Below, in pieces: positions 3,293 through 25,509 of a stretch of 64,000 nt of DNA. A program made the position numbers and the translations under genes. Positions within the stretch are counted from its first letter, which is position 1, and each line of letters opens with the position of its first letter. The DNA lies in the NCBI GenBank assembly GCA_002269645.1, contig NIVC01001502.1:62001-126000 (forward strand). The letters are read 5' to 3'. The stretch comes from Macrostomum lignano (taxonomy: Eukaryota). The notes beneath the pieces are model-generated. The model made no database searches and was not told the origin of the DNA. It saw only the letters and a list, made by a program, of their open reading frames with translations.

Positions 3293-4344
3293 ATATATAT
3301 ATAACATATATTTCTATAATCTTATATTTAAAGCTAAGTAGACTGGCCAGGTTTAATACATTTCTTCCTAGATGGTTACCAACTTAAATGCAAGACTGCA
3401 TTTGCATTTGATTTAAATTCCTAAAATCTTAAAATTAGATAATGAAAAGAAGATTAATAAATTACAATGCAAATCTCACAATTAAAAGAGTAACAGTCTT
3501 GATTCTATTGGTTTATTAAATCATATTGTCCAATGGGTTATTTATGTATTAACTATTTGTAATTAAGACATGTCTAACTATTTATAATTTTGTTTTAATG
3601 TTACAACCAGTGTTATCAAAGCTTTAAATCAGTTATTTAGTCCTACTAATTCACTCAATATTTTACTAGAATTCATAGTTTAACTTTGAGCATTGCTATT
3701 TATTATATGCCAAGTAGTCTGGATACTGTTCTAAGTTTTCTTTTATTGACTCTTATATTGACTCTAAATGAGTATATATTCCTATGAGTAATTCTATCTA
3801 TAATTTTTTTATATTTTAACTATCCAATTATTAAACTATAATCCTATATTCAGTTCTCTTTGTATAGAATAACTTGACCTCTATAATGTTTTAATGTATT
3901 ACAAGGTATTACTTGCATAACAAATGATCAATATATGTTGGATATTTACAAAAAGCACCATTTAAGCATTGAGAATCACTGTGACATTTGGCATCTTAGG
4001 TCCAAAGTCAGGATGGCGAATTCAAACCTAACTTGCTTGCTGGTGCAGTCAAAACTTTAAAATTAAATAAAATATTTGCCCTATCATTTTATATTACTAT
4101 ACCTCAAACCTAGTGAAGTTTACATATTTATAGATTTGACAATTGATAGAAGTATTAAACTTGCAAGAGTCCTAATAATTTTAAAATTATTGATACTTCA
4201 AATTAAAAAAAAACAGTGAATAAAATACAGAGTGCCAATTTAGAACTCATGGTCCAAATGCAGGATGCTGTGGTGTAATCCACCATTCCAGCTTTGCGAG
4301 TAGTAATCAGCCCCATATAATTGAGCACACTGCCAGTGCCAACA

Positions 4345-5148
4345 ATGAATGGCAACAAAGTTCACCCTTCGTCGAAGGCCTCGGCTCACTATAGGAATAG
4401 CAACAGCAGCGCCGCCGCTACCACCGGCGCCCCAATTGGTCGGCCGGCGCCATTACAGTCTGATAGCGCCGCTGGATGCGCCGGCGCCAAATCCGTGCCA
4501 GTGCTGCCGCAGATGATTGGCGCCGCCGCAGCTGCCGCCGCCGCCCTCGCCGCCTCGCCTTCTTCGTCCGGCTTAACGCCCGGCGCCGCGTCTTTAGTTG
4601 GCGCCGGCGCTAGCGCCGCAGACTCGGCCGCGCACAATATGGAACTGGCCTCGCTATTCGAGTGCCCAGTGTGCTTTGACTACGCCCTGCCCCCTGTAAT
4701 CCAGTGCCAGGCTGGTCACATTGTGTGCTCAAACTGCCGGGCTAAACTCACCAGCTGTCCGAGCTGTCGCGGGCCTCTGGCCAATATTCGCAACTTGGCT
4801 ATGGAGCGCCTAGCCGCCCAGGTACAGTTCCCGTGCAAATACGCTAGCAATGGTTGTCTGGCGGCGTTTCACCACACGGCTAAGGCTGAGCACGAGGAGA
4901 TCTGCGAGTTCCGGCCGTACGTTTGTCCCTGTCCTGGCGCCAGCTGTAAATGGCAGGGCTCACTTGAGAATGTCATGCAGCACCTCACGCAGCAGCACAA
5001 GAGCATCACCACTTTGCAGGGAGAAGATATCATCTTTTTAGCTACTGATATTAATTTGCCCGGCGCGGTGGATTGGGTCATGATGCAGAATTGCTTCGGC
5101 TATCATTTCATGCTTGTGCTGGAGAAACAGGAGAGAATGGATAGTCAG
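4345..5148 (+). CDS. SIAH1: Seven-in-absentia (SIAH/sina) E3 ubiquitin ligase, exon 1 of 2 (RING and zinc fingers)
   Basis: [49 protein letters not shown], then [33 protein letters not shown]-like SINA domain. First ATG at 4345; donor CAG|GTGAGT at 5149. Confidence 0.95.
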
Positions 5149-5243
5149 GTGAGTGGGCCATTCTTCTCTCTCGCAATCCGGTGTGTTCCTTTTCAAAATA
5201 TTTTAGCCATGATAGCAGTGACATGCCTTGTATGAGCAGATGA

Positions 5244-5640
5244 TTGGTCATGCATTTAGTCGCATACCCGACCCCATCTCCAGTTTCATACCCGACAACA
5301 TCTCCAGTCCCATACCCGATTCCATCTTCAGTCCCATACCAAATCCCATATTTAGTCCCATACCCGATCCCATCTCCAGTGCCATACCCGATCCCATCTT
5401 TAGTTCTATCTCCAGTGCCATACCCGATCCCATCTTCAGTCACATACCCGATACCATCTCCAGTCCCATACCCGGTCCCACCCTCAGTCCCATCCTGAGT
5501 CCCACCCTCAGTCTCATCCTGAGTCCCACCCTCAGTCTCATCCTGAGTCCCATCCTCAGTTCCATCCTCAGTTCCATCCTCAGTCCCATCCTGAGTCCCA
5601 CCCTCAGTCTCATCCTGAGTCCCACCCTCAGTCTCATCCT
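5244..5640. repeat. Intronic 24-bp (cccatacccgatcccatctccagt) and 12-bp (cccatcctcagt) minisatellites, segment A
   Basis: Units visible; the same variant order recurs in RPS3 intron 1. Confidence 0.9.
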
Positions 5641-5660
5641 AAATCTCCCGTCAATTCCCA

Positions 5661-5742
5661 AGTTGGCAGTGATTATAACCATTCTGCTGTTCACATTCGT
5701 ACAAGTTATGCCGACAGCATATTGTTCAGTATGATGCCAACT
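5661..5742 (+). ncRNA. Candidate box C/D snoRNA, paralog a (SIAH intron)
   Basis: Terminal stem AGTTGGCA/TGCCAACT; C-like GTGATTA at 5669; guide CTGCTGTTCACAT at 5684; D'-like CGTA; C'-like ATGCCGA; D-like ATGA at 5731. Confidence 0.65.
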
Positions 5743-5786
5743 GGAATTGATTTCATAAAATATGATTTTGTTGTTTTATATGAGCA

Positions 5787-5872
5787 GCTATGATTAAATT
5801 GCATTACTGCTGTTCACATTCGTTAGCCTTAAAGATTTGAGCTATGACGACAGCAACATGCTTTGTATGAGC
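5787..5872 (+). ncRNA. Candidate box C/D snoRNA, paralog b (SIAH intron)
   Basis: C-like ATGATTA at 5790; guide ACTGCTGTTCACAT; D'-like CGTT; C'-like ATGACGA at 5844; D-like ATGA at 5867; only a short GC stem. Confidence 0.6.
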
Positions 5873-5934
5873 AAATAATAGGTTATTCAGTCCCATACCT
5901 GATCTCATTGCAGATCCTTTCTCCATTCCCATAC

Positions 5935-6850
5935 TATACCAGATCCCATCTTCAGACCCGATCCCAGATCCCACCTCCCAGTCCCCATACCCGATCCTAT
6001 CTCCAGTCCCATACCCGATCCCAGATCCCATCTCCCAGTCCCATACCCGATCCCAGATCCCATCTCCCAGTCCCATACCCGATCCCATCTCCAGTCCCAT
6101 ACCCGATCCTATCCCTAGTCCCATACCCGATCCCAGATCCCATCTCCCAGTCCCATACCCGATCCCATCTCCAGTCCCATACCCGATCCCATCTCCAGTC
6201 CCATACCCGATCCCATCTCCAGTCCCATACCCGATCCCATCTCCAGTCCCATACCCGATCCCATCTACAGTCCCATACCCGATCCCATCTCCAGTCCCAT
6301 ACCCGATCCCATCCCTAGTCTTATACCCGATCCCATCTCTAGTCCCATACCCGATCCCATTTCCAATCTTATACCCGATCCCATCTCCAGTCCCATACCC
6401 GATCCCAGATCCCATCTCCCAGTCCCATACCCGATCCCATCTCCAGTCTTATACCCGATCCCATCTCCAGTCCCATACCCGATCCCATCTCTAGTCCCAT
6501 ACCCGATCCCATCTCTAGTCCCATACCCGATCCCATCTCCAGTTCCATAACCGATCCCATCTTCAGTTCTATACCCGATCCCATCTCCCAGTCCCATACC
6601 CGATCCCATCTCCAGTCCCATACCCGATCCCAGATCCCATCTCCCAGTCCCATACCCGATCCCATCTCCCAGTCCCATACCCGATCCCATCTCCAGTCCC
6701 ATACCCGATCCCATCTCCAGTCCCATACCCGATTCCATCTTCAGTCCCATACCCGATCCCATCTCCAGTCCCAAACCTGATCCTATCTTCAGTTCCATAC
6801 CCGATCCCATCTTCACTCCCATACCCGATCCCATCTCCAGTCCCATCTCA
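5935..6850. repeat. Intronic 24-bp minisatellite, segment B
   Basis: Tandem cccatacccgatcccatctccagt with variants; source of the GDGIGYGT pseudo-ORFs. Confidence 0.95.
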
Positions 6851-6962
6851 TTACATTATGTTTCTTCTTCATTTACACAACAGCATGATGTTAGCTAGCT
6901 TAACCACTACTGCCCAACTTCTCATCTTCTCAAATAGCATCTCCACCCCGCCTATACTGCAG

Positions 6963-7307
6963 GTGATGTTCTACGCCATCGTGCAGCTCATTGGCACCCG
7001 CAAGCAAGCGGAGCAGTTCGCCTACAGACTCGAGCTCAATGGCCAACGCCGCCGACTCACCTGGGAAGCGACGCCGCGGTCAATTCACGACGGCGTGCAC
7101 GCCGCCATTGCCAACTCGGACTGCCTGGTATTCGATTCCAATATTGCCTCCCTGTTCGCTGAGACTGGCAACCTGGGCATTAGCGTGACTATCAGCATGG
7201 CAACAGCCGCCGCTGTTGCTACGGGATCATTAAACTCTTCGTCTGATTTGCCTCAGCAGCAGCAGCAGAGTTCGTCCATTTGCGGTCAGGGCATGCAGAT
7301 TGGCTGA
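6963..7307 (+). CDS. SIAH1: SIAH/sina E3 ligase, exon 2 (substrate-binding domain); ~382 aa protein in total
   Basis: Acceptor CTGCAG|GTG, phase 0; [42 protein letters not shown] matches the SIAH C-terminal domain. Confidence 0.95.
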
Positions 7308-7507
7308 TGCAATTAGCGACCGTTGATAAGTTAATGATAATATATGCATACATCTATTGCTTTGTAAGAAGTCACTGATTTCACTTAAAATTGCTTTTTT
7401 ACCAAAACTGATTGATTGCTTTGAAACTGTGTGAAAAAACTGTCGTAGGAATCTCCTCCCTAAAACCGAACTGTATCACCTTCCTTCCAAGCCTGAAAAA
7501 AACAACC

Positions 7508-8160
7508 CATGAGACTCGCCAAAAATCCACCATGAGAATCGCCCACAATCCACCATGAGAATCGCCCACAATCCACCATGAGAATCGCCCACAATCCACC
7601 ATGAGAATCGCCCACAATCCACCATGAGAATCGCCCACAATCCACCATGAGAATCGCCCACAATGCACCATGAGAATCGCCCACAAACCACCATGAGAAT
7701 CGCCCACAATCCACCATGAGAATCGCCAAAAATCCACCATGAGAATCGCCCACAAACCACCATGAGAATCGCCAAAAATCCACCATGAGAATCGCCCACA
7801 AACCACCATGAGAATGGCCCACAAATCACCATGAGAATCGCCCACAATCCACCATGAGAATCGCCCACAATCCACCATGAGAATCGCCCACAAATCACCA
7901 TGAGAATCGCCCACAATCCACCATGAGAATCGCCCACAATCCACCATGAGAATCGCCCACAATCCACCATAAGAATCGCCCACAATCCACCATGAGAATC
8001 GCCCACAATCCACCATGAGAATCGCCCACAATCCACCATAAGAATCGCCCACAATCCACCATGAGAATCGCCCACAATCCACCATAAGAATCGCCCACAA
8101 ACCACCATAAGAATCGCCCACAAACCACCATAAGAATCGCTCACAAATCACCATGAGCAT
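7508..8160. repeat. 22-bp minisatellite (ccaccatgagaatcgcccacaa)
   Basis: About 29 visible units downstream of the SIAH stop. Confidence 0.95.
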
Positions 8161-9224
8161 GGCCCTCAAAATGCTTGTAAATGTGACAGTGAAGAGTTCG
8201 CGTGTACTCCAATGAGTACTTTTATTTCGGCATATTTCTCGCGCACTCTGCCATCCAAATCGTACAATTTCGAGAACTGCTTGCTTTGCATTGTAAAAAT
8301 ACACAAATTGAATTAATATTTAGCTCATCACCTAAACTCACTACTTATCCGTGTAGAAGCCCTTCAATAGTAGCGTGATGAGACAATTTTTCCATTGAGA
8401 ACAAAACTTGAGACGTGCATCGAACAAGGTCAATTTTTTTCTCTGTCCATTCTCTAGCTAGACAACTTTATTAGAAAATTGCAGACGCTGGTTAGCGACC
8501 CCGCTAAGAATCTTTATTTGTCAACAGAAATTGTGATTGATTGTATGTTTATTTATAAATTTACTCTCTATATTAATTTAGTTTGCTTCTGCGTACAATA
8601 ATAGTTTATCGCACATGTTTTGTGTCACTGCCGTGTGTTTATTAAGTTTTTTTCGAACAAAATGTATGCAAAAATGTATTAACCGGATTATTAATTATTC
8701 ACTATTGAGCGTGTGCAGCGCGAGTGCAGGTGCTTCGGTCCGTGGGTGGGGCGGCAGAACTCGCACATTTTCTTTGGGTCTCGTCTTTGCTTTGTGCTGT
8801 AGCAATATATATAGCTTATAACCCGGCTACTGGCAGTAGTTTATTACTTTTAATCCTGTTGTACAAACCCATTGTATCGTTAATGCCTTTTTTGTTATTA
8901 AATAACTCTCTTATCTGCAAACCAATTCAGTGTCTGAAGCTGTCACCGTCTTATTTTCTCCCTAAATTTGACCCTTAATATCATTTTGTTTGACTTAAGA
9001 CATCTGACAGCCGCAACCCTCCTTTTACTTTCTATATATGGAGTGGAAATATGAAAAAAATATTTTTTAATAAAACGAGACGCGTCTTCAGTTAAGCTGT
9101 CGCCTAAATCTTTAAGTTGCAATTGTTTTTAGTAACTAGTGCAGATTTATAAGCTCTGCATTATGCGACTTCACTTGGTTCTTGGCTCCTTTACTGCCAC
9201 TTGTCAGGCTGTAGGGAATAGGGT

Positions 9225-10245
9225 CGGTTGGGGAGAGTCAGTTGGGGAGAGTCAGTAGGGGGAGAGTCAGTAGGCCAGAGTCAGTAGGGGGAGAGTCAGT
9301 AGGCCAGAGTCAGTAGGGGGAGAGTCAGTAGGCCAGAGTCAGTAGGCCAGAGTCAGTAGGGGGACAGTCAGTAGGGGGAGAGTCAGTAGGGGGAGAGTCA
9401 GTAGGCCAGAGTCAGTAGAGGATAGTCAGTAGGGGGAGAGTCAGTAGGCCAGAGTCAGTAGGCCAGAGTCAGTAGGCCAGAGTCAGCAGGCCAGAGTCAG
9501 TAGGGGGAGAGTCAGTAGGGGGAGAGTCAGTAGGCCAGAGTCAGTAGGGGGAGAGTCAGTAGGGGGAGAGTCAGTAGGGGAGAGTCAGTAGGGGGAGAGT
9601 CAGTAGGGGGAGAGTCAGTAGGCCAGAGTCAGTAGGGGGAGAGTCAGTAGGCCAGAGTCAGTAGGGGGAGAGTCAGTAGGCCAGAGTCAGTAGGGGGAGA
9701 GTCAGTAGGCCAGAGTCAGTAGGGGGAGAGTCAGTAGGCCAGAGTCAGTAGGGGGAGAGTCAGTAGGCCAAAGTCAGTAGGGGAGAGTCAGTAGGGGAGA
9801 GTCAGTAGCGGAGAGTCAGTAGGCCAGAGTCAGTAGGGGGAGAGTCAGTAGCGGAGAGTCAGTAGGCCAGAGTCAGTAGGGGAGAGTCAGTAGGGGAGAG
9901 TCAGTAGCGGAGGGTCAGTAGAAAGAGAATCAGTAGGGGGAGAGTCAGTAGGCCAGAGTCAGTAGGGGGAGAGTCAGTAGGCCAGAGTCAGTAGGGGGAG
10001 AGTCAGTAGGGGAGAGTCAGTAGGGGAGAGTCAGTAGCGGAGAGTCAGTAGGCCAGAGTCAGTAGGGGGAGAGTCAGTAGCGGAGAGTCAGTAGGCCAGA
10101 GTCAGTAGGGGAGAGTCAGTAGGGGAGAGTCAGTAGCGGAGGGTCAGTAGAAAGAGAATCATTAGGGGGAGAGTCAGAAGGGGGGAGTCAGTAGGGGGAG
10201 AGTCAGTAGTGAGATAAGGAGAGTCAGTAGGGAGATGAGAGTCAC
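9225..10245. repeat. 15/16-bp G-rich minisatellite (gagagtcagtaggg[gg]/gagagtcagtaggcca)
   Basis: Units visible; ends ~40 bp upstream of the RPS3 ATG. Confidence 0.95.
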
Positions 10246-10283
10246 CACTCTTAAATAAGAGTATCCACTGTCCGCATGCAAGC

Positions 10284-10598
10284 ATGGCCGCCAGCAAGAA
10301 TGCTGTAATGAGCAAGAAGCGGGCATTCGTTGCCAACGGCGTGTTCCGCGCCGAACTGGACGAATTCTTGAAGCGCGAACTAGCCGAGGACGGGTACTCG
10401 GGCATCGAGCTCCGCGTGACCCCGGCCAAGATCGAGGTGATCGTGCTGGCCACCCGCACCCAGAGCGTGCTGGGCGAGAAGGGCCGCAAGGTTCGCGAGC
10501 TCACCGCCGTGCTGCAGAAACGATTCGGCTTCGAGGATGGCCAGATTGAAATCTACGCGGAGAAGATGGCCAACAGGGGTCTGTCCGCTGTAGCACAG
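10284..10598 (+). CDS. RPS3: 40S ribosomal protein S3 (uS3), exon 1 of 3
   Basis: [39 protein letters not shown] domain; donor CAG|GTGGGT at 10599. Confidence 0.97.
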
Positions 10599-10644
10599 GT
10601 GGGTTGAGCGTTGCCTTGGTGACAGATTTTATCATTTGTAACTC

Positions 10645-11070
10645 TGTCCCATCCTCAGTCCCATCCTCAGTCCCATCCTCAGACCCATTCTCAGTCCCAT
10701 CCTCAGTTCCATCCTCAGTCCCATCCTCAGACCCATCCTCAGACCCATCCTCAGTCCCATCCTCAGACCCATCCTCAGTTCCATCCTCAGTCCCATCCTC
10801 AGTCCCATCCTCAGTTCCATCCTCAGTCCCATCCTCAGTTCCATCCTCAGTTCCATCCTCAGTCCCATCCTCAGACCCATCCTCAGACCCATCCTCAGAC
10901 CCATCCTCAGTTCCATCCTCAGACCCATCCTCAGTCCCATCCTCAGACCCATCCTCAGACCCGTCCTCAGTCCCATCCTCAGTCCCATCCTCAGTTCCAT
11001 CCTCAGACCCATCCTCAGACCCATCCTCAGACCCATCCTTAGTCCAATCCTCAGAACCATCCCGAGTCCC
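10645..11070. repeat. 12-bp minisatellite (cccatcctcagt/aga) in RPS3 intron 1
   Basis: Units visible; same family as the 12-bp array in the SIAH intron. Confidence 0.95.
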
Positions 11071-11088
11071 ATCTCCCGTCAATTCCCA

Positions 11089-11170
11089 AGTTGGCAATGA
11101 TTATAACCATTCTGCTGTTCACATTCGTAGAAGTTATGCCGACAGCATATTGTTCAGTATGATGCCAACT
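11089..11170 (+). ncRNA. Candidate box C/D snoRNA, paralog a, RPS3 copy 1
   Basis: Near-identical to 5661-5742; C-like box ATGATTA. Confidence 0.65.
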
Positions 11171-11214
11171 GGAATTGATTTCATAAAATATGATTTTGTT
11201 GTTTTATATGAGCA

Positions 11215-11300
11215 GCTATGATTAAATTGCATTACTGCTGTTCACATTCGTTAGCCTTAAAGATTTGAGCTATGACGACAGCAACATGCTTTGTATGAGC
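11215..11300 (+). ncRNA. Candidate box C/D snoRNA, paralog b, RPS3 copy 1
   Basis: Matches 5787-5872. Confidence 0.6.
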
Positions 11301-12494
11301 AAATAATAGGTTATTCAGTCCCATACCTGATCTCATTGCAGATCCTTTCTCCATTCCCATACTATACCAGATCCCATCTTCAGACCCGATCCCAGATCCC
11401 ACCTCCCAGTCCCCATACCCGATCCCAGATCCCACCTCCCAGTCCCCATACCCGATCCCAGATCCCACCTCCCAGTCCCCATACCCGATCCTATCTCCAG
11501 TCCCATACCCGATCCCAGATCCCATCTCCCAGTCCCATACCCGATCCCAGATCCCATCTCCCAGTCCCATACCCGATCCCAGATCCCATCTCCCAGTCCC
11601 ATACCCGATCCCATCTCCAGTCCCATACCCGATCCTATCCCTAGTCCCATACCCGATCCCAGATCCCATCTCCCAGTCCCATACCCGATCCCATCTCCAG
11701 TCCCATACCCGATCCCATCTCCAGTCCCATACCCGATCCCATCTCCAGTCCCATACCCGATCCCATCTCCAGTCCCATACCCGATCCCATCTACAGTCCC
11801 ATACCCGATCCCATCTCCAGTTCCATACCCGATCCCATCCCTAGTCTTATACCCGATCCCATCTCTAGTCCCATACCCGATCCCATTTCCAATCTTATAC
11901 CCGATCCCATCTCCAGTCCCATACCCGATCCCAGATCCCATCTCCCAGTCCCATACCCGATCCCATCTCCAGTCTTATACCCGATCCCATCTCCAGTCCC
12001 ATACCCGATCCCATCTCTAGTCCCATACCCGATCCCATCTCCAGTTCCATAACCGATCCCATCTTCAGTTCTATACCCGATCCCATCCCCCAGTCCCATA
12101 CCCGATCCCATCTCCAGTCCCATACCCGATCCCATCTCCAGTCCCATACCCGATTCCATCTTCAGTCCCATACCAAATCCCATATTTAGTCCCATACCCG
12201 ATCCCATCTCCAGTGCCATACCCGATCCCATCTTTAGTCCCATCTCCAGTGCCATACCCGATCCCATCTTCAGTCACATACCCGATACCATCTCCAGTCC
12301 CATACCCGGTCCCACCCTCAGTCCCATCCTGAGTCCCACCCTCAGTCTCATCCTGAGTCCCACCCTCAGTCTCATCCTGAGTCCCATCCTCAGTTCCATC
12401 CTCAGTTCCATCCTCAGTCCCATCCTGAGTCCCACCCTCAGTCTCATCCTGAGTCCCACCCTCAGTCTCATCCTAAATCTCCCGTCAATTCCCA

Positions 12495-12576
12495 AGTTGG
12501 CAGTGATTATAACCATTCTGCTGTTCACATTCGTAGAAGTTATGCCGACAGCATATTGTTCAGTATGATGCCAACT
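12495..12576 (+). ncRNA. Candidate box C/D snoRNA, paralog a, RPS3 copy 2
   Basis: Near-identical to 5661-5742. Confidence 0.65.
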
Positions 12577-12620
12577 GGAATTGATTTCATAAAATATGAT
12601 TTTGTTGTTTTATATGAGCA

Positions 12621-12706
12621 GCTATGATTAAATTGCATTACTGCTGTTCACATTCGTTAGCCTTAAAGATTTGAGCTATGACGACAGCAACATGCTTTGT
12701 ATGAGC
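12621..12706 (+). ncRNA. Candidate box C/D snoRNA, paralog b, RPS3 copy 2
   Basis: Matches 5787-5872. Confidence 0.6.
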
Positions 12707-13900
12707 AAATAATAGGTTATTCAGTCCCATATCTGATCTCATTGCAGATCCTTTCTCCATTCCCATACTATACCAGATCCCATCTTCAGACCCGATCCCA
12801 GATCCCACCTCCCAGTCCCCATACCCGATCCCAGATCCCACCTCCCAGTCCCCATACCCGATCCCAGATCCCACCTCCCAGTCCCCATACCCGATCCTAT
12901 CTCCAGTCCCATACCCGATCCCAGATCCCATCTCCCAGTCCCATACCCGATCCCAGATCCCATCTCCCAGTCCCATACCCGATCCCAGATCCCATCTCCC
13001 AGTCCCATACCCGATCCCATCTCCAGTCCCATACCCGATCCTATCCCTAGTCCCATACCCGATCCCAGATCCCATCTCCCAGTCCCATACCCGATCCCAT
13101 CTCCAGTCCCATACCCGATCCCATCTCCAGTCCCATACCCGATCCCATCTCCAGTCCCATACCCGATCCCATCTCCAGTCCCATACCCGATCCCATCTAC
13201 AGTCCCATACCCGATCCCATCTCCAGTTCCATACCCGATCCCATCCCTAGTCTTATACCCGATCCCATCTCTAGTCCCATACCCGATCCCATTTCCAATC
13301 TTATACCCGATCCCATCTCCAGTCCCATACCCGATCCCAGATCCCATCTCCCAGTCCCATACCCGATCCCATCTCCAGTCTTATACCCGATCCCATCTCC
13401 AGTCCCATACCCGATCCCATCTCTAGTCCCATACCCGATCCCATCTCCAGTTCCATAACCGATCCCATCTTCAGTTCTATACCCGATCCCATCCCCCAGT
13501 CCCATACCCGATCCCATCTCCAGTCCCATACCCGATCCCATCTCCAGTCCCATACCCGATTCCATCTTCAGTCCCATACCAAATCCCATATTTAGTCCCA
13601 TACCCGATCCCATCTCCAGTGCCATACCCGATCCCATCTTTAGTCCCATCTCCAGTGCCATACCCGATCCCATCTTCAGTCACATACCCGATACCATCTC
13701 CAGTCCCATACCCGGTCCCACCCTCAGTCCCATCCTGAGTCCCACCCTCAGTCTCATCCTGAGTCCCACCCTCAGTCTCATCCTGAGTCCCATCCTCAGT
13801 TCCATCCTCAGTTCCATCCTCAGTCCCATCCTGAGTCCCACCCTCAGTCTCATCCTGAGTCCCACCCTCAGTCTCATCCTAAATCTCCCGTCAATTCCCA

Positions 13901-13982
13901 AGTTGGCAGTGATTATAACCATTCTGCTGTTCACATTCGTAGAAGTTATGCCGACAGCATATTGTTCAGTATGATGCCAACT
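13901..13982 (+). ncRNA. Candidate box C/D snoRNA, paralog a, RPS3 copy 3
   Basis: Near-identical to 5661-5742. Confidence 0.65.
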
Positions 13983-14026
13983 GGAATTGATTTCATAAAA
14001 TATGATTTTGTTGTTTTATATGAGCA

Positions 14027-14112
14027 GCTATGATTAAATTGCATTACTGCTGTTCACATTCGTTAGCCTTAAAGATTTGAGCTATGACGACAGCAACATG
14101 CTTTGTATGAGC
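14027..14112 (+). ncRNA. Candidate box C/D snoRNA, paralog b, RPS3 copy 3
   Basis: Matches 5787-5872. Confidence 0.6.
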
Positions 14113-15145
14113 AAATAATAGGTTATTCAGTCCCATATCTGATCTCATTGCAGATCCTTTCTCCATTCCCATACTATACCAGATCCCATCTTCAGACCCG
14201 ATCCCAGATCCCACCTCCCAGTCCCCATACCCGATCCCAGATCCCACCTCCCAGTCCCCATACCCGATCCCAGATCCCACCTCCCAGTCCCCATACCCGA
14301 TCCTATCTCCAGTCCCATACCCGATCCCAGATCCCATCTCCCAGTCCCATACCCGATCCCAGATCCCATCTCCCAGTCCCATACCCGATCCCATCTCCAG
14401 TCCCATACCCGATCCCATCTCCAGTCCCATACCCGATCCCATCTCCAGTCCCATACCCGATCCCATCTCCAGTCCCATACCCGATCCCATCTACAGTCCC
14501 ATACCCGATCCCATCCCTAGTCTTATACCCGATCCCATCTCTAGTCCCATACCCGATCCCATTTCCAATCTTATACCCGATCCCATCTCCAGTCCCATAC
14601 CCGATCCCAGATCCCATCTCCCAGTCCCATACCCGATCCCATCTCCAGTCTTATACCCGATCCCATCTCCAGTCCCATACCCGATCCCATCTCTAGTCCC
14701 ATACCCGATCCCATCTCCAGTTCCATAACCGATCCCATCCCTAGTCTTATACCCGATCCCATCTCTAGTCCCATACCCGATCCCATCTCCAGTCCCATAC
14801 CCGATTCCATCTTCAGTCCCATACCAAATCCCATATTTAGTCCCATACCCGATCCCATCTCCAGTGCCATACCCGATCCCATCTTTAGTCCCATCTCCAG
14901 TGCCATACCCGATCCCATCTTCAGTCACATACCCGATACCATCTCCAGTCCCATACCCGGTCCCACCCTCAGTCCCATCCTGAGTCCCACCCTCAGTCTC
15001 ATCCTGAGTCCCACCCTCAGTCTCATCCTGAGTCCCATCCTCAGTTCCATCCTCAGTTCCATCCTCAGTCCCATCCTGAGTCCCACCCTCAGTCTCATCC
15101 TGAGTCCCACCCTCAGTCTCATCCTAAATCTCCCGTCAATTCCCA

Positions 15146-15227
15146 AGTTGGCAGTGATTATAACCATTCTGCTGTTCACATTCGTAGAAGTTATGCCGAC
15201 AGCATATTGTTCAGTATGATGCCAACT
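15146..15227 (+). ncRNA. Candidate box C/D snoRNA, paralog a, RPS3 copy 4
   Basis: Near-identical to 5661-5742. Confidence 0.65.
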
Positions 15228-15271
15228 GGAATTGATTTCATAAAATATGATTTTGTTGTTTTATATGAGCA

Positions 15272-15357
15272 GCTATGATTAAATTGCATTACTGCTGTTC
15301 ACATTCGTTAGCCTTAAAGATTTGAGCTATGACGACAGCAACATGCTTTGTATGAGC
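15272..15357 (+). ncRNA. Candidate box C/D snoRNA, paralog b, RPS3 copy 4
   Basis: Matches 5787-5872. Confidence 0.6.
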
Positions 15358-16390
15358 AAATAATAGGTTATTCAGTCCCATATCTGATCTCATTGCAGAT
15401 CCTTTCTCCATTCCCATACTATACCAGATCCCATCTTCAGACCCGATCCCAGATCCCACCTCCCAGTCCCCATACCCGATCCCAGATCCCACCTCCCAGT
15501 CCCCATACCCGATCCCAGATCCCACCTCCCAGTCCCCATACCCGATCCTATCTCCAGTCCCATACCCGATCCCAGATCCCATCTCCCAGTCCCATACCCG
15601 ATCCCAGATCCCATCTCCCAGTCCCATACCCGATCCCATCTCCAGTCCCATACCCGATCCCATCTCCAGTCCCATACCCGATCCCATCTCCAGTCCCATA
15701 CCCGATCCCATCTCCAGTCCCATACCCGATCCCATCTACAGTCCCATACCCGATCCCATCCCTAGTCTTATACCCGATCCCATCTCTAGTCCCATACCCG
15801 ATCCCATTTCCAATCTTATACCCGATCCCATCTCCAGTCCCATACCCGATCCCAGATCCCATCTCCCAGTCCCATACCCGATCCCATCTCCAGTCTTATA
15901 CCCGATCCCATCTCCAGTCCCATACCCGATCCCATCTCTAGTCCCATACCCGATCCCATCTCCAGTTCCATAACCGATCCCATCCCTAGTCTTATACCCG
16001 ATCCCATCTCTAGTCCCATACCCGATCCCATCTCCAGTCCCATACCCGATTCCATCTTCAGTCCCATACCAAATCCCATATTTAGTCCCATACCCGATCC
16101 CATCTCCAGTGCCATACCCGATCCCATCTTTAGTCCCATCTCCAGTGCCATACCCGATCCCATCTTCAGTCACATACCCGATACCATCTCCAGTCCCATA
16201 CCCGGTCCCACCCTCAGTCCCATCCTGAGTCCCACCCTCAGTCTCATCCTGAGTCCCACCCTCAGTCTCATCCTGAGTCCCATCCTCAGTTCCATCCTCA
16301 GTTCCATCCTCAGTCCCATCCTGAGTCCCACCCTCAGTCTCATCCTGAGTCCCACCCTCAGTCTCATCCTAAATCTCCCGTCAATTCCCA

Positions 16391-16472
16391 AGTTGGCAGT
16401 GATTATAACCATTCTGCTGTTCACATTCGTACAAGTTATGCCGACAGCATATTGTTCAGTATGATGCCAACT
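16391..16472 (+). ncRNA. Candidate box C/D snoRNA, paralog a, RPS3 copy 5
   Basis: Matches 5661-5742, including the CGTACAAG variant. Confidence 0.65.
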
Positions 16473-16516
16473 GGAATTGATTTCATAAAATATGATTTTG
16501 TTGTTTTATATGAGCA

Positions 16517-16602
16517 GCTATGATTAAATTGCATTACTGCTGTTCACATTCGTTAGCCTTAAAGATTTGAGCTATGACGACAGCAACATGCTTGGTATGA
16601 GC
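16517..16602 (+). ncRNA. Candidate box C/D snoRNA, paralog b, RPS3 copy 5
   Basis: As 5787-5872 with one substitution before the D-like box; flank diverges afterwards. Confidence 0.6.
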
Positions 16603-16738
16603 ACATCTTAAGTCTCTTATCTGATACCATCTTCAGTTCAGTCCCACCCCCGATCCCAATCTCATCATTCAGTCCTTGACTACAAACATACATGTACTCG
16701 TAAATTCATAAGCCAATAATTTTAAGTTTTAGTACTAA

Positions 16739-16826
16739 TGGCAATGATTTTAACATCTATTGTATATCTGCTGTTCACATTCGTACCAACTTATGACGAC
16801 AGCTATTTAAGAAAAGTATGATGCCA
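16739..16826 (+). ncRNA. Candidate box C/D snoRNA, diverged paralog c
   Basis: Stem TGGCA/TGCCA; ATGATTT at 16744; guide at 16768; CGTA; ATGACGA at 16793; ATGA at 16818. Essentially only the boxes, guide and stem are conserved versus paralogs a and b. Confidence 0.65.
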
Positions 16827-16854
16827 AGACTAAATTAAAAGCAAACATAAGTAC

Positions 16855-17340
16855 TAGATGGCGCCTGATCAATCAGTGTCAGATGGCGCTAGATCAATCA
16901 GTGTCAGATGGCGCCAGATTAATCAGCGTCAGATGGCGCTAGATCAATCCGTATCAGATGGCGCCAGATCAATCAGTGTCAGATGGCGCCAGATCAATCA
17001 GTGTCAGATGGCGCTAGATCAATCAGTGTCAGATGGCGCCAGATTAATCAGCGTCAGATGGCGCTAGATCAATCCGTGTCAGATGGCGCCAGATCAATCA
17101 GTGTCAGATGGCGCCAGATCAATCAGCGTCAGATGGCGCCAGATCAATCAGTGTCAGATGGCGCCAGATCAACAATCAGCGTCAGATGGCGCCAGATCAA
17201 TCAGCGTCAGATGGCGCCAGATCAAACAGCGTCAGATGGCACCAGATCAATCAGTGTCAGATGGCGCCAGATCAACAATCAGCGTCAGATGGCGCCAGAT
17301 CAACAATCAGCGTCAGATGGCGCCAGATCAATCAGCGTCA
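16855..17340. repeat. 25-bp minisatellite (agatggcgccagatcaatcagcgtc)
   Basis: About 19 visible units near the 3' end of RPS3 intron 1. Confidence 0.95.
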
Positions 17341-17442
17341 CCGATTTACCGTCGTGTTGCCCCAAACAGCATAACTAACTTACACTCTACTAGCAGAATC
17401 CAATCCTCTTTACTAAAACAAACTGCCAACCCAACCATGCAG

Positions 17443-17694
17443 GCCGAGTCCCTGCGCTACAAGCTTCTCGGCGGCCTGGCTGTCCGTCGCGCCTGCTACG
17501 GCGTGCTGCGCTTCATTATGGAGTCTGGCGCCAAAGGCGCCGAAGTCATTGTTAGCGGCAAGCTTCGCGGTCAGCGCGCCAAATCGATGAAATTCACCGA
17601 AGGCTTCATGATCCACAGCGGCGAGCCGTCTGTCCGCTTCATTGACCGGTCTGTGCGGCACGTACAGCTCCGGCAGGGTGTACTGGGCATCCAG
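17443..17694 (+). CDS. RPS3: RPS3 exon 2
   Basis: Acceptor ATGCAG|GCC; [51 protein letters not shown]; donor CAG|GTGAGG. Confidence 0.97.
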
Positions 17695-17704
17695 GTGAGG
17701 CTTA

Positions 17705-18345
17705 TTGACTCACTGTATCAGTTATGACTCCTGTATGACTCGTGTATGACTCACTGTATGACTCCTGTATGACTCCTGTATGACTCACTGTATGACTAGC
17801 TATATGATTCACTTTATGACTCACTGTATGACTAGAAATATAATCACTGTATGACTAGCTATATAACTCACCGTATGACTCACTGTATGACTAGCTGTAT
17901 TAATCACTGTATCACTAACTGTATGATCCACTGTATGTTGCGCTGTATGACTCACTGTATTATTCTATCTATGGCTCACTGATATCACTAGCTTTATGAT
18001 CCACATTATGACTCACTGTATGAACCGCTGTACGAATCACTAACTAAATGATTCACTGTATGACTAGCTATATGACTCACACTATGACTTACCGTATAAC
18101 TCACTGTGTGACTAGCTGTATAAATAGCTGTATGACTCACCGTATGACTCACTGTATGACTAGCTGTATTACTCACCGTATGACTCACTGTATTACTCAC
18201 CGTATGACTCACAGTATTATTCTATCTATGGCTCATTGTATGACTAGCTGTATGACTCACAGTATTATTCTATCTATGGCTCACTGTATCACTAGCTTTA
18301 TGATCCACTCTATGACTCACTGTATGAACCGCTGTACGACTCACT
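17705..18345. repeat. Degenerate 12-bp repeat (ctgtatgactca) filling RPS3 intron 2
   Basis: Units visible. Confidence 0.85.
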
Positions 18346-18369
18346 AACTCCAATTTCAATTCCTCTCAG

Positions 18370-18537
18370 GTGAAGATCATGCAGAACTGGGAGGCCCCGG
18401 CCGGAGGCGTCGCGCCCCGCAAGCCCCTGCCGGATCACGTGACCATCGCCGATCCCAAAGAGCAGCCGGTGCCGGCCGAGCCTTATTCGGAGAATAAGCA
18501 GCAGAAGCCTCAGGCTGAGGTCATGGCCGTGGCCTAA
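18370..18537 (+). CDS. RPS3: RPS3 exon 3; 244 aa protein in total
   Basis: Acceptor CTCAG|GTG; VKIMQNWEAPAGGVAPRKPLPDHVTIADPKE, stop TAA at 18535. Not in the ORF track because it is short. Confidence 0.95.
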   Translation: MKIMQNWEAPAGGVAPRKPLPDHVTIADPKEQPVPAEPYSENKQQKPQAEVMAVA

Positions 18538-23692: not shown

Positions 23693-23804
23693 AAAGTAAA
23701 CGTGAATACCTTTTATGATCGTGTTCACTCACTTCGACTGACTTTTGAGGCTGAAATTTTGTCTAATCATAGACTACTCTAATTATCTCTAATAGGTTGA
23801 TCTC

Positions 23805-24470
23805 CCAATGGACTGGTCTTAGTCTCCGAATGGATTGGTCTTAGTCTCCCTAATGAACTGGTCTTAGTCTCCCTAATGAGCTGGTCTTAGTCTCCCAAAT
23901 GAGCTGATCAAGTCCCCCCAATGAGCTGATCAAGTCTCCCTAATGAGCTGATTAAGTCTCCCCAATGAGCTGATCAAGTCTCCCTAATGAGCTGATTAAG
24001 TCTCCCCAATGAGCTGATCAAGTCTCCCTAATGAGCTGATCAAGTCTCCCCAATGAGCTGATTAAGTCTCCCCAATGAGCTGATTAAGTCTCCCTAATGA
24101 GCTGATCAAGTCTCCCCAATGAGCTGATTAAGTCTCCCCAATGAGCTGATTAAGTCTCCCCAATGAGCTGATCAAGTCTCCCCAATGAGCTGATTAAGTC
24201 TCCCCAATGAGCTGATCAAGTCTCCCCAATGAGCTGATCAAGTCTCCCCAATGAGCTGATTAAGTCTCCCCAATGAGCTGATCAAGTCTCCCCAATGAGC
24301 TGATCAAGTCTCCCCAATGAGCTGATTAAGTCTCCCCAATGAGCTGATCAAGTCTCCCCAATGAGCTGATCAAGTCTCCCCAATGAGCTGATTAAGTCTC
24401 CCCAATGAGCTGATCAAGTCTCCCCAATGAGCTGATCAAGTCTCCCAATGAGCTGATTAAGTCTCCCTAA
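23805..24470. repeat. 22-bp minisatellite (aatgagctgatcaagtctcccc); repeated at 27031-27538 and 30261-30922
   Basis: Units visible; lies at the start of each PSMA5 duplication unit. Confidence 0.95.
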
Positions 24471-25315
24471 TAAAATGCACAAAGTTTTTCTTCTAAAAAT
24501 GCTCCGATAAGAAAAAATCAATACTCCGTGCTCAAATCCTGTCTACGATGCTTTTAGATGCAGTTTTTCGCGCATCTGCGTTTATTTTGCTATCCAGCTA
24601 TCTTTAATACTCTGATCTACCCCGTGCGTTTTCCATCTATTTGAAAGTTCTGCTCTTGACAAAATTGACACAGAAATTAAAAGTTTTTTTAAGTACCCGA
24701 TTAACATTCGAAAACATCTGACCGGAACTGCCTATGCTTTATGTTTTATAAATGTACTTTTCTGGCTTGCAAACACTTTTCAGTCACATTTATTCTCTCG
24801 AGTCTTTGCGCTTTTATAAGGTTTTTGTGTCGAAATACAATATTTCGAGTTCGCCAAATCCTCCCTGAAAGTCCCAACTGTTCTTTGTTATCTTTTTCGA
24901 TTTTTTTCTCTCAGTCATTTTTGTCTCTGTACGCTCAGCCCCCACGCCTGATTGTAAAAGCAATTTATATTATTACTATTATTATTATCATTATTATGCG
25001 CTCAATCGTCTGCCAAATTTGTCGTTGCGCAGCTAAAACACACACACTGTTTGACTTTGATCAGCAATAATAACATCTCTTTTCCTGGACGGCATTTCTT
25101 AATTTTGAAAATACATTTTGTTCGTCATTTTAAAAAAAATTATATTTAGCCTATATTTCTACTTGATAAGTAGCTTATTAAGAGTGTTGTATATTTTATC
25201 AAGAATTATGATAACGATTCAACTAATTTTCAAACGCTTTCTGCCAGAAGGTGCGCGCGCCGATCTTTCGGGAGTCAGTTATTAGCAATTGTGAAATCAG
25301 CAATTTATTGGCATC

Positions 25316-25454: not shown

Positions 25455-25509
<55 letters not shown>

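What the first reader, a model, noticed from the sequence alone, without database searches (positions are those of the whole stretch)
5300..16432. RPS3 intron unit is a circular permutation of the SIAH intron interior
SEEN: the SIAH intron reads A-S-B, while RPS3 intron 1 reads S-B-A-S-B-A-S-B-A-S-B-A-S'. In SIAH the segment is bounded by an identical 41-bp direct repeat (5300-5340 and 6713-6753, 1413 bp apart). That 41-mer is exactly the B-to-A junction in RPS3 (12134, 13540, 14785, 16030; first periods 1406 bp). Diagnostic bases place a possible crossover in a ~32-bp window: the first S has A11097/G11130, internal copies have G/G, and the last has G16399/C16432. INFERENCE: either a 1.4 kb circle formed between the 41-bp repeats, multimerised and integrated at a resident S, or the SIAH segment was templated from the RPS3 array. 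Either way, intronic DNA carrying snoRNA candidates moved between unrelated neighbouring genes via minisatellite homology. The 1406/1406/1245/1245 pattern implies additional stepwise duplication.
Basis: partly seen in the sequence, partly recalled or inferred. Interest (0 to 1): 0.75.

Follow-up and report, generated by a model that had tools for sequence, protein, structure and literature searches.

The report
snoRNA cassette copied between neighbouring introns
In one haplotype of the flatworm Macrostomum lignano, a 1.4-kb piece of the SIAH intron (two snoRNA-like genes plus flanking minisatellites) was copied by homologous recombination into a matching resident copy in the neighbouring RPS3 intron and expanded to four tandem units; it is a clean example, but the mechanism is ordinary.

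Summary
The window is Macrostomum lignano. Two other haplotype contigs of the same SIAH-RPS3 locus (L001, L002) carry an unexpanded RPS3 intron 1, with one S between resident flanks (P-S-D). S is also present in the SIAH intron of all three haplotypes.

The window's array is that resident S split by four inserted units. These units carry SIAH-specific flanks. The unit joint is SIAH's right array fused to SIAH's left array exactly at the 42-mer. So the DNA went from SIAH to RPS3, anchored in S itself, and the unit was closed at the minisatellite 42-mer.

The a-a-b-b pattern of the units argues for stepwise unequal exchange, not a one-shot multimer. A circle is possible but not required. Ectopic gene conversion or synthesis-dependent strand annealing (SDSA) gives the same product.

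S holds two box C/D snoRNA-like elements, and a third paralog lies downstream in the RPS3 intron. All share a 17-nt block containing a 13-nt complement to conserved large-subunit (LSU) rRNA. No Rfam family matches.

Kb-scale tandem duplications of minisatellite-bounded units occur twice more in this window. Interest is moderate.

The parts
4345..7307 (+). SIAH (seven-in-absentia) gene: exon 1 at 4345-5147, single intron at 5148-6961, exon 2 at 6962-7307.
   Evidence: ORFs and splice sites. The 382-aa product matches M. lignano SIAH. The L001/L002 gene calls carry Sina Pfam domains.
5180..5252 (+). e0: possible decayed relic of an e2-like element at the 5' end of the SIAH intron, followed directly by 24-mer repeats.
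   Evidence: 53-nt, 77% match to the 3' half of e2, E=0.003 within the window; alignment. The profile search does not detect it, so this part is weak.
5258..5460 (+). B': left 24-mer (type-1) minisatellite of the SIAH intron. It contains the left 42-mer at 5299-5340.
   Evidence: TRF; exact-match extents. From 5299 to S it is 99.5% identical to the array. To the left of 5299 only generic repeat similarity remains.
5461..5640 (+). A: 24/12-mer (type-2) minisatellite. It ends in the A-type junction to S, which has a 5-bp deletion relative to the P-type junction.
   Evidence: TRF; junction types in the alignment of 11 S copies.
5636..5945 (+). S in SIAH, a unique segment holding two box C/D snoRNA-like elements. 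e1 is 5655-5746 (core 5665-5738). e2 is about 5783-5875.
   Evidence: The 17-mer CTGCTGTTCACATTCGT lies at 5684 and 5807.
5945..6846 (+). B: right 24-mer (type-1) minisatellite of the SIAH intron. It contains the right 42-mer at 6712-6753.
   Evidence: TRF. 6668-6753 is identical to the array at 12089-12174, and the similarity drops right after 6753.
10284..18537 (+). RPS3 gene: exon 1 at 10284-10598, intron 1 at 10599-17442 (6.8 kb), exon 2 at 17443-17695, exon 3 at 18371-18537.
   Evidence: Spliced translation of 244 aa. It is 100% identical to M. lignano uS3, protein P0001.
10642..11073 (+). P: resident 12-mer minisatellite (CTCAGTCCCATC) upstream of the first S. The same array is present in the unexpanded alleles.
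   Evidence: TRF. The P-type junction is shared by W_R1 and the RPS3 S of L001 and L002.
11071..16372 (+). Four tandem S-B-A units: U1 11071-12476, U2 12477-13882, U3 13883-15127, U4 15128-16372. Unit joints (42-mers) lie at 12133-12174, 13539-13580, 14784-14825 and 16029-16070.
   Evidence: The units carry SIAH-type A and B flanks. One unit differs from the SIAH 42-mer-to-42-mer segment by 6 mismatches in about 1350 bp plus repeat-unit indels.
16366..16603 (+). R5: the last S copy. Its left junction is the donor A-type. Its right end is the resident D-type, truncated at S position 238.
16604..16739 (+). D: resident unique sequence downstream of S in RPS3 intron 1, with about three degenerate 24-mer-like repeats.
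   Evidence: It has the same D-type right junction as the unexpanded alleles of L001 and L002; window 16600-16855 is 98% identical to them with no mismatch and one gap.
16740..16825 (+). e3: third box C/D-like paralog, resident in RPS3 intron 1 and also present in L001 and L002.
   Evidence: 69.8 bits; fold with a GGCA/UGCC terminal stem.

Best explanation
The window comes from Macrostomum lignano. Both the SIAH intron and RPS3 intron 1 have long carried paralogous copies of a small cassette: [12-mer minisatellite]-S-[24-mer minisatellite]. S encodes two sense-strand box C/D snoRNA-like RNAs (e1, e2). RPS3 has a third paralog (e3) further downstream.

In the haplotype sampled here, homology-directed repair copied SIAH-type sequence (S-B joined to B'-A-S) into the resident S of RPS3 intron 1, 5.4 kb downstream.
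- Both ends of the inserted tract lie inside the 231-bp S core.
- The unit was closed where SIAH's right and left 24-mer arrays share an identical 42-bp variant repeat.
- The intermediate cannot be decided from sequence. It could be template switching during ectopic gene conversion or synthesis-dependent strand annealing (SDSA), a transient tandem duplication in SIAH that was then converted across, or a one-unit circle.

The single inserted unit then grew to four by stepwise unequal exchange or slippage between units (a-a-b-b pattern). The result is 11 snoRNA-like genes in one intron of a highly expressed ribosomal-protein gene.

Shown: the anatomy, the polymorphism, the direction and the joint. 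Inferred: the repair pathway, snoRNA function and any dosage effect.
For: Organism and comparators:
- The RPS3 product is 100% identical to M. lignano uS3.
- L001 and L002 are other copies of the same SIAH-RPS3-nucleoporin locus, mostly 97-99% identical in unique DNA (one upstream segment in L002 is 93%).

Unexpanded alleles:
- L001 and L002 have one S in RPS3 intron 1 with P-type left and D-type right junctions, plus e3.
- The RPS3 gene spans 3.3 kb there, against 8.25 kb here.
- Their S differs from W_R1/R5 at several further positions (e.g. CCGTG and GACAAC). S is only 231-300 bp between dissimilar flanks, which I judge too short for a long-read overlap, so a clean assembly collapse is unlikely.

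Direction:
- The B-type right junction and the B'/12-mer-S-B layout occur at SIAH in W, L001 and L002. At RPS3 they occur only inside W's array.
- W_R1 keeps resident P on its left, and W_R5 keeps resident D on its right.

Joint: array 12089-12174 equals SIAH 6668-6753 exactly, and array 12133-12238 equals SIAH 5299-5404 exactly. They overlap in the 42-mer, and identity falls to generic repeat level just outside it on both SIAH sides.

Recency: the SIAH unit and an array unit differ by 6 of about 1350 aligned bases (0.44%), against 2-3% between haplotypes.

Stepwise growth: U1~U2 (2 mismatches), U3=U4, and the two pairs differ by 4 mismatches plus 161 bp of indels.

Proneness to duplication: L002 has an independent 965-bp tandem duplication of S in SIAH. 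The window holds two other kb-scale tandem duplications of minisatellite-bounded units.

snoRNA reading:
- All copies lie on the sense strand.
- The paralog alignment keeps TGATT, the 17-mer, ATGMCGACA and GTATGA invariant while the spacers diverge.
- e1 folds with a terminal stem of 8 bp (12 with its outer extension) enclosing the boxes, z=-2.4.
- The C-box variant UGAUUA co-occurs with the D-box variant AUGA. By standard K-turn geometry this replaces the G-C pair by U-A (my inference).
- The 13-mer ATGTGAACAGCAG, complementary to the guide-like block, lies in a conserved LSU rDNA primer site.
- Human SNORD143/144, which guide 28S Um2402, also share one intron. That the 13-mer spans the site equivalent to Um2402 rests on my memory of the human 28S sequence.
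Against: - Only one assembly of this haplotype is available, and no reads. U3=U4 being identical could be a very recent duplication or an assembler stutter.
- W also has an expansion that L001 and L002 lack at a second site (23.8-33.8 kb). That could mean real haplotype differences or a systematic difference between assemblies.
- Excision and integration at the 42-mer are mirror images, so the joint alone does not give direction. Direction rests on the haplotype comparison.
- L001 is 100% identical to W across SIAH exon 1 to S but about 2-3% different downstream. It is therefore a mosaic and not a fully independent witness.
- No Rfam family matches S or e3.
- The D' box is non-canonical, and e2 lacks a clear terminal stem.
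- The M. lignano rRNA sequence and expression data were not available.
Confidence: 0.7

Rival explanations
1. A 1.4-kb extrachromosomal circle formed by recombination between the two SIAH 42-mers. It multimerised (rolling circle or concatenation) and integrated by a single crossover into the resident S of RPS3.
For: The unit joint is exactly the product expected from recombination between 5299-5340 and 6712-6753. The array is bounded by S on both sides with resident outer flanks, as expected for integration by one crossover in S. The site pattern A/G, G/G, G/C fits one crossover if the circle was G/G and the resident copy was A/C.
Against: - Every SIAH S seen has C, not G, at the second site, so an extra mutation is needed.
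- The units fall into adjacent near-identical pairs that differ from each other by 161 bp of indels. That is the signature of serial single-unit duplications, not a multimer made at once.
- SIAH still holds its copy, so a circle would have to come from a sister or replicated copy.
- Gene conversion or SDSA with a template switch gives the same sequence without a circle.
- No circle can be observed with these tools.
Confidence: 0.15
2. The RPS3 array is the older structure, and the SIAH A-S-B segment (42-mer to 42-mer) was templated from it, or a one-unit circle from it integrated into a small resident 24-mer array in the SIAH intron.
For: Excision and integration at the 42-mer give mirror-image structures, so SIAH 5299-6753 could be one array unit inserted at a resident 42-mer. 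L001, the only other carrier of the A-type SIAH haplotype, is identical to W there and may share it by descent.
Against: - The array is absent from RPS3 in L001 and L002, which have clean P-S-D.
- L002's SIAH intron, a clearly different haplotype, also has 24-mers-12-mers-S-B with the B-type right junction. S and B are therefore native to SIAH.
- The B-type junction occurs at RPS3 only inside W's array.
- L001 carries SIAH A-S-B with both 42-mers but no RPS3 array.
Confidence: 0.05
3. Assembly artefact. The array, or its copy number, was created by misassembly of reads from the SIAH intron, or from a SIAH haplotype with a tandem array, into the RPS3 intron.
For: The genome is 15% simple and tandem repeats, and its assemblies are known to be difficult and redundant (PMC5730564). 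U3 and U4 are identical. W is expanded relative to L001 and L002 at two separate sites.
Against: - The joint sequence (B-tail/42-mer/A) does not exist as such in SIAH, so it must come from reads.
- The units differ by SNPs and indels in a consistent hierarchy.
- R1 and R5 are clean hybrids with resident outer flanks and private SNPs.
- Two chimeric joins inside a 231-bp segment would be required.
Confidence: 0.07
4. S plus its flanks is a mobile element or a snoRNA retroposon that inserted independently into both introns.
For: The same orientation at two nearby loci. snoRNA retroposons are known in mammals (from memory).
Against: - No inverted repeats were found.
- In the junction alignments I saw no poly(A) tract or target-site duplication next to S; this was by eye, not a dedicated scan.
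- The transferred tract includes more than 1 kb of intronic minisatellite and ends inside homologous S.
- No further copies in about 132 kb, and none in the RPS3 paralog locus L003.
Confidence: 0.02

Closest known systems
Interlocus (ectopic) gene conversion / SDSA with repeat expansion, followed by unequal sister-chromatid exchange (for example the yeast double-strand-break repair studies of tandem repeats by Paques, Leung and Haber 1998; cited from memory)
   Same: The donor stays intact. The tract ends lie in shared homology (S). Repeats in the template allow dissociation and re-invasion that adds whole units. Array copies are more alike than the alleles are (0.44% against 2-3%). Copy number then changes in single-unit steps.
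   Different: Here donor and recipient are introns of two unrelated neighbouring genes. The co-converted material is a snoRNA-like cluster plus two kinds of minisatellite. The pathway is inferred from the end product only.
Intronic box C/D snoRNA paralog pairs, for example human SNORD143/SNORD144 in intron 3 of SEC31A (PMC11773364)
   Same: Two related C/D-type elements sit in one intron on the sense strand. The shared guide-like block is complementary to the conserved LSU rRNA segment that, by my recollection of the human sequence, contains Um2402, Cm2409 and Gm2411.
   Different: There is no detectable sequence or covariance-model homology. The boxes are UGAUUA and AUGA, not UGAUGA and CUGA. 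The D' box is unclear. The copy number here is 5 pairs plus 1. The host genes differ.
U15 (SNORD15) in intron 1 of vertebrate RPS3 (Tycowski et al. 1993; from memory)
   Same: A box C/D snoRNA hosted in the first intron of RPS3.
   Different: Rfam SNORD15 does not match. The predicted target region is different. The RPS3 paralog L003 has no such element.
snoRNA retroposons (snoRTs) and cis/trans duplication of snoRNAs between introns (Weber 2006; Zemann et al. 2006; from memory)
   Same: The outcome is the same: a snoRNA paralog acquires a new host intron.
   Different: The transfer here is DNA-templated and homology-dependent, not RNA-mediated. I saw no poly(A) tract or target-site duplication. 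Flanking intron DNA came along, and the target already held a paralog.
eccDNA formed by recombination between direct repeats, and its reintegration
   Same: The unit joint is the sequence a 1.4-kb circle excised between the 42-mers would carry.
   Different: No circle has been observed. The chromosomal donor is intact. The unit hierarchy does not fit a one-shot multimer.
Higher-order tandem repeats (macrosatellite-like arrays) built from minisatellite-bounded units
   Same: Head-to-tail kb-scale units with identical joints, copy number that varies between haplotypes, and two more examples in the same window.
   Different: The array is small (4 units), intronic and very young. Its unit was imported from a neighbouring gene.

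Membership tests
Box C/D snoRNA | Box C (RUGAUGA) near the 5' end and box D (CUGA) near the 3' end, able to form a K-turn. | tested here: inconclusive
   All three paralogs have RUGAUU(A/U) and AUGA at the expected places. By K-turn geometry the G-to-U change in C and the C-to-A change in D keep a Watson-Crick pair (my inference). The boxes are not canonical.
Box C/D snoRNA | A terminal stem of 4-8 bp bringing the C and D boxes together. | tested here: inconclusive
   Met for e1 (8-bp stem, 12 bp with its outer extension; z=-2.4) and for e3 (5 bp, with an outer extension beyond it). No clear terminal stem for e2.
Box C/D snoRNA | An antisense element of at least 10 nt to rRNA or snRNA, immediately upstream of box D or D'. 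| tested here: inconclusive
   The invariant block contains CTGCTGTTCACAT, the complement of ATGTGAACAGCAG, which lies in a conserved LSU rDNA primer site. The downstream D' box is not recognisable. M. lignano rRNA was not available.
Box C/D snoRNA | Intronic, on the sense strand of a host gene (the typical animal arrangement). | tested here: met
   All 25 profile matches are on the + strand, inside the SIAH intron or RPS3 intron 1.
Box C/D snoRNA | Match to a curated family, or evidence of expression or fibrillarin association. | tested here: not met
   No Rfam match at gathering score. The best E-values are 1.4-3, for unrelated C/D families. Expression cannot be tested with these tools.
Interlocus gene conversion / homology-directed copy | Donor and recipient share homology at both tract ends, and the donor is retained. 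| tested here: met
   R1 is resident-left and donor-right. R5 is donor-left and resident-right. Both switches lie within S. SIAH A-S-B is intact.
Interlocus gene conversion / homology-directed copy | The copies are more similar to each other than expected from the divergence of the surrounding or allelic DNA. | tested here: met
   0.44% between the SIAH unit and an array unit, against 2-3% between haplotypes in unique DNA.
Tandem array grown by unequal exchange | Head-to-tail units with identical joints, hierarchical similarity of neighbouring units, and copy-number polymorphism. | tested here: met
   Four joints have the same 42-mer context. The a-a-b-b hierarchy is seen. There are 5 S copies here against 1 in L001 and L002 at RPS3, and 1, 1 and 2 at SIAH.
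eccDNA-mediated transfer | Physical detection of a circle carrying the joint. | not testable with these tools
   Only the joint sequence is consistent with it.
Transposable element / snoRNA retroposon | Defined termini (TIR or poly(A)), target-site duplications, and dispersed copies. | tested here: not met
   No inverted repeats. No further copies in 132 kb. The tract ends lie in homologous S, and I saw no poly(A) tract or target-site duplication in the junction alignments. The whole genome could not be searched.

The most novel reading that the evidence does not exclude
Minisatellite-flanked snoRNA cassettes act as recombination-mobilised modules in M. lignano. Direct-repeat recombination in the flanking minisatellites releases one-unit circles (or drives template switching), which paste the cassette into any intron already holding a paralog. 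Amplification inside a highly expressed ribosomal-protein intron is then retained because it raises snoRNA dosage. This would be a DNA-level, homology-based route of snoRNA host switching and copy-number evolution, distinct from retroposition.
Probability: 0.12. Interest if true: 0.65.

Novelty: new member of a known kind. Interest (0 to 1): 0.38.

Why it matters
This is a well-resolved natural 'before and after' pair. Unexpanded and expanded alleles of the same intron are both available, with the donor 5 kb away and the recombination joint defined to 42 bp. It shows how related minisatellites on both sides of a unique segment make that segment prone to duplication, and how sequence can be transferred between neighbouring genes. 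If the elements are real snoRNAs, it also shows how snoRNA paralogs in different host genes can be homogenised and amplified at the DNA level.

For M. lignano genomics it is also a warning. Kb-scale copy-number differences between haplotypes are common at this locus (three cases in 64 kb), and they affect gene models.

The processes involved are textbook ones: gene conversion and unequal exchange in a genome that is 15% tandem repeat. The interest is therefore as a clean example, not as a new mechanism.

Tried and rejected
- Rfam at gathering score on the whole window and on L001 and L003, and at E<=10 on 5150-5960 and 16590-16870: no credible family.
I reached the loci through the homologue search instead.
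- The SIAH homologue search gave only UniRef entries without contigs, so no further loci.
- A search with the 49-aa stop-free peptide across S, meant to find other contigs carrying S, found nothing. Genome-wide dispersal of S therefore remains untested.
- Transposon reading: no inverted repeats and no extra copies. Rejected.
- Unequal crossing-over directly between SIAH S and RPS3 S: rejected, because it would duplicate or delete SIAH exon 2 and RPS3 exon 1, which is not seen.
- 'SIAH is an excerpt of the array': rejected, because identity stops sharply at the 42-mer on both SIAH sides and because of the haplotype data.
- Clean collapse of an array in L001 and L002: judged unlikely. It would need an overlap of only 231 bp, and their S carries private SNPs.
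- The RPS3 paralog locus L003 has no S, no minisatellites and no guide motif in its intron 1, so it gave no ancestral state.
- The L002 SIAH duplication has no crisp joint, so it could not serve as the predicted intermediate.

Full report

Yes. The 41-mer ATCTCCAGTCCCATACCCGATTCCATCTTCAGTCCCATACC occurs exactly six times in 64 kb: at 5300, 6713, 12134, 13540, 14785 and 16030, all on the + strand. The SIAH pair is in fact identical over 42 bp (5299-5340 and 6712-6753).

The unique segment S (about 310 bp, 5636-5945) has six copies with spacings of 5428, 1406, 1406, 1245 and 1245 bp. Five copies are 99.3-100% identical. The sixth (16366-16603) stops at S position 238. SIAH 5258-6846 aligns over more than one period of the RPS3 array, so 'A-S-B is a rotated window on (S-B-A)n' is a correct description.

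The diagnostic bases are as reported. Site 1 is A at 11097 and G in all the other copies. Site 2 is G in R1-R4 and C at 16432.

The units compare as follows:
- U1 vs U2: 2 mismatches in 1406 bp.
- U3 = U4: identical.
- U2 vs U3: 4 mismatches plus indels of 112, 24 and 25 bp.

The gene models hold. SIAH has exons at 4345-5147 and 6962-7307. RPS3 has exons at 10284-10598, 17443-17695 and 18371-18537. Both genes are on the + strand.

**2. Where the window comes from, and the comparators**

The spliced RPS3 product is 100% identical to a Macrostomum lignano protein. The exact-protein look-up returned two contigs of assembly GCA_002269645.1 that carry the same SIAH-RPS3-nucleoporin-proteasome locus (L001 and L002), and one contig with a 95% paralog (L003).

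In unique DNA, L001 and L002 are mostly 97-99% identical to the window; one upstream segment in L002 is 93%. L001 is 100% identical from SIAH exon 1 through S and about 2-3% different downstream, so it is a mosaic.

The genome paper reports that 15% of the genome is simple or tandem repeat and that the assembly contains 180 Mb of redundant blocks at least 95% identical (PMC5730564). L001 and L002 are therefore other haplotypes or redundant chromosome copies.

**3. The key result: unexpanded alleles exist, and both introns are old homes of S**

In L001 and L002, RPS3 intron 1 has a single S, covering S positions 8-238. It is preceded by a 12-mer minisatellite P. It is followed by unique sequence D, a third snoRNA-like element e3 and a 25-mer array. 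The RPS3 gene spans 3.3 kb there, against 8.25 kb here.

S is also present in the SIAH intron of all three haplotypes. There is one copy in W and in L001, both with the A-S-B layout. There are two copies 965 bp apart in L002. L003 has none.

Aligning all eleven S copies gives two left-junction types and two right-junction types:
- Left, P-type: found at W_R1, at the RPS3 S of L001 and L002, and at both SIAH copies of L002.
- Left, A-type (carrying a 5-bp deletion): found at SIAH of W and L001, and at W_R2-R5.
- Right, B-type: found at every SIAH copy and at W_R1-R4.
- Right, D-type: found at W_R5 and at the RPS3 S of L001 and L002.

The window's intron therefore reads P-[R1]-B-A-[R2]-B-A-[R3]-B-A-[R4]-B-A-[R5]-D. 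This is the unexpanded P-S-D allele with four (B-A-S) units inserted inside S, and the inserted material carries SIAH-specific flanks.

A clean assembly collapse of an array to P-S-D is unlikely. In my judgement it would need an overlap confined to 231 bp of S. In addition, the S of L001 and L002 has private differences from W_R1 and R5.

**4. The joint and the direction**

Array 12089-12174 is identical to SIAH 6668-6753, the tail of B. Array 12133-12238 is identical to SIAH 5299-5404, and from 5299 through A into S the match is 99.5%. The two stretches overlap in the 42-mer. Just outside the 42-mer, on both SIAH sides, similarity drops to the generic level of the repeat family. The unit is therefore the product of joining SIAH's right array to SIAH's left array at the 42-mer.

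Excision and integration are mirror images, so the joint alone does not fix the direction. The haplotypes do:
- B-type flanks and the 24-mer/12-mer-S-24-mer layout are native to SIAH in all three haplotypes, including the clearly different L002.
- At RPS3 they occur only inside this array.
- L001 has the SIAH A-S-B segment with both 42-mers but no RPS3 array.

I conclude that the transfer went from SIAH to RPS3.

The event is young. Measured from 42-mer to 42-mer, the SIAH segment and an array unit differ by 6 of about 1350 aligned bases, plus four repeat-unit indels. Haplotypes differ by 2-3%.

**5. How it most likely happened**

Entry into RPS3 used homology in the unique S core. R1 is resident on its left and donor on its right. 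R5 is donor on its left and resident on its right. Unit closure used the minisatellite 42-mer.

Three routes give the same sequence:
(a) A break in or near RPS3 S is repaired from SIAH S. The nascent strand copies S-B, dissociates, re-invades at the upstream 42-mer, copies A-S and anneals to the other side of the break.
(b) A tandem duplication forms in SIAH by unequal exchange at the 42-mers, and simple gene conversion then carries S-B/A-S across. L002 shows that SIAH duplications of S do occur.
(c) A one-unit circle integrates by a crossover in S.

I cannot separate these from one assembly.

What I can say is that the four units were not made at once. Adjacent pairs are near-identical (U1~U2, U3=U4), while the two pairs differ by 161 bp of indels and 4 SNPs. 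That pattern points to serial single-unit duplications.

An equally parsimonious history has resident A/G and donor G/C, with the internal copies being R5-left/R1-right recombinants from the first unequal exchange. G11130 is private to R1-R4.

W_R1's left flank and its A at site 1 resemble the SIAH copies of L002 more than the RPS3 copies of L001 and L002. This hints that exchange between the two introns is recurrent.

Direct unequal crossing-over between the two S copies is excluded, because it would duplicate SIAH exon 2 and RPS3 exon 1.

**6. What S is**

S contains two related elements, e1 (5655-5746) and e2 (about 5783-5875). A third, e3 (16740-16825), sits downstream in RPS3 intron 1 and is also present in L001 and L002.

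A sequence profile built from them finds 25 matches in 132 kb. All are on the sense strand, all lie in these two introns, and there are none elsewhere and none in L003. The 17-mer CTGCTGTTCACATTCGT has 13 exact matches in the window and no other match at up to 3 mismatches, against 0.15 expected by chance.

The paralog alignment keeps TGATT, the 17-mer, ATGMCGACA and GTATGA invariant while the spacers diverge and take indels. This is the pattern expected of box C/D snoRNA paralogs (C, guide, C', D).

e1 folds with a terminal stem of 8 bp (12 bp with its outer extension) that closes on the boxes (z=-2.4). e3 has a shorter stem. e2 has none that is clear.

The boxes are UGAUUA and AUGA, not UGAUGA and CUGA. 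In standard K-turn geometry, C-box G6 pairs with D-box C1, so the two changes together keep a Watson-Crick pair. This is my inference from established K-turn structure and was not tested.

The complement of the first 13 nt of the block, ATGTGAACAGCAG, lies within a conserved LSU rDNA primer site, GTTCCATGTGAACAGCAGT (PMC10538997). By my recollection of the human 28S sequence this segment contains Um2402, Cm2409 and Gm2411. Um2402 is guided by SNORD143 and SNORD144, which also share a single intron (PMC11773364).

Against the snoRNA reading:
- No Rfam family matches.
- The D' box is not recognisable.
- I had no M. lignano rRNA sequence and no expression data.

I put 'functional box C/D snoRNAs' at about 0.6.

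A 53-nt, 77% match to the 3' half of e2 lies right after the SIAH splice donor (e0). It may be a decayed older copy, but the evidence is weak.

**7. Context and verdict**

The window has two more kb-scale tandem duplications of units bounded by minisatellites, at 23.8-33.8 kb and 42.8-47.2 kb. The first of these is again single-copy in L001 and L002. Such events are therefore routine in this genome.

The finding is real. The direction can now be stated.

The circle-multimer mechanism is neither needed nor favoured. The processes involved are known ones. I rate it a new, unusually clean member of a known kind, of moderate interest.

Noticed in passing
window 23801-33802 (units starting about 23.8, 27.0 and 30.3 kb); compare L001:17989-21453: There are three tandem copies (97.6-98.7% identical, periods about 3.07-3.39 kb) of a unit made of a 22-mer array, unique DNA, a (TCTG)n microsatellite and a 27-mer array. 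In L001 and L002 the unit is single-copy and contains exons 1-2 of a proteasome alpha-subunit gene. This haplotype therefore appears to carry three copies of the gene's 5' part, with the last exon present only once.
   Followed up: partly
window 42815-47164: Two tandem copies (97.6% identical, period 2553 bp) of a unit made mainly of a 16-mer array and a (GACA)n microsatellite, next to 23-mer arrays. This is another kb-scale duplication bounded by minisatellites.
   Followed up: no
L001:1-1410 (breakpoint equivalent to window position about 1379): L001 carries an extra partial copy of the SIAH intron's B array (including an exact 41-mer at L001:1008), the 3' end of the intron and the first 130 bp or so of exon 2. 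It lies about 3 kb upstream of the SIAH gene and is absent from the window. The copy runs off the start of the locus, so whether an S lies further upstream is unknown.
   Followed up: partly
L002:5107-6381: There is an independent tandem duplication of S in the SIAH intron of haplotype L002. The period is 965 bp, the left junctions are P-type, and the spacer arrays are only about 86% alike. The S cassette has therefore duplicated at least twice independently.
   Followed up: yes
window 4321-5945 compared with L001:4386-6010: The window is 100% identical to L001 over 1.6 kb (SIAH exon 1 to S) but only 97-98% identical on either side. The haplotypes at this locus are mosaics, produced by recombination, by conversion between chromosome copies, or by chimeric assembly.
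   Followed up: partly
window 19766-23692: A long single ORF (1308 aa) encodes an FG-repeat, nucleoporin-like protein. Its repeats are coded by 42-bp (14-aa) minisatellites at 21262-23262. Minisatellites in this genome are therefore also found inside coding sequence, in frame.
   Followed up: no
window 10642-11073 compared with L001:10356-11455: The resident 12-mer array P upstream of S in RPS3 intron 1 has 36 repeats here and 92 in L001 and L002. Almost every intron and spacer in the window is filled with a different minisatellite family. The first 4 kb of the window is AT-rich (28-33% GC), unlike the rest.
   Followed up: no
window 5749-5789 (between e1 and e2): A short stretch reading ATGATTT-TGTTGTTTTAT-ATGA-GCAGC looks like a collapsed mini-copy of the same C/D unit. 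The D-box-GCAG-C-box motif recurs at the end of e0 (5240-5250). S may itself have been built by older tandem duplication of one snoRNA unit.
   Followed up: no
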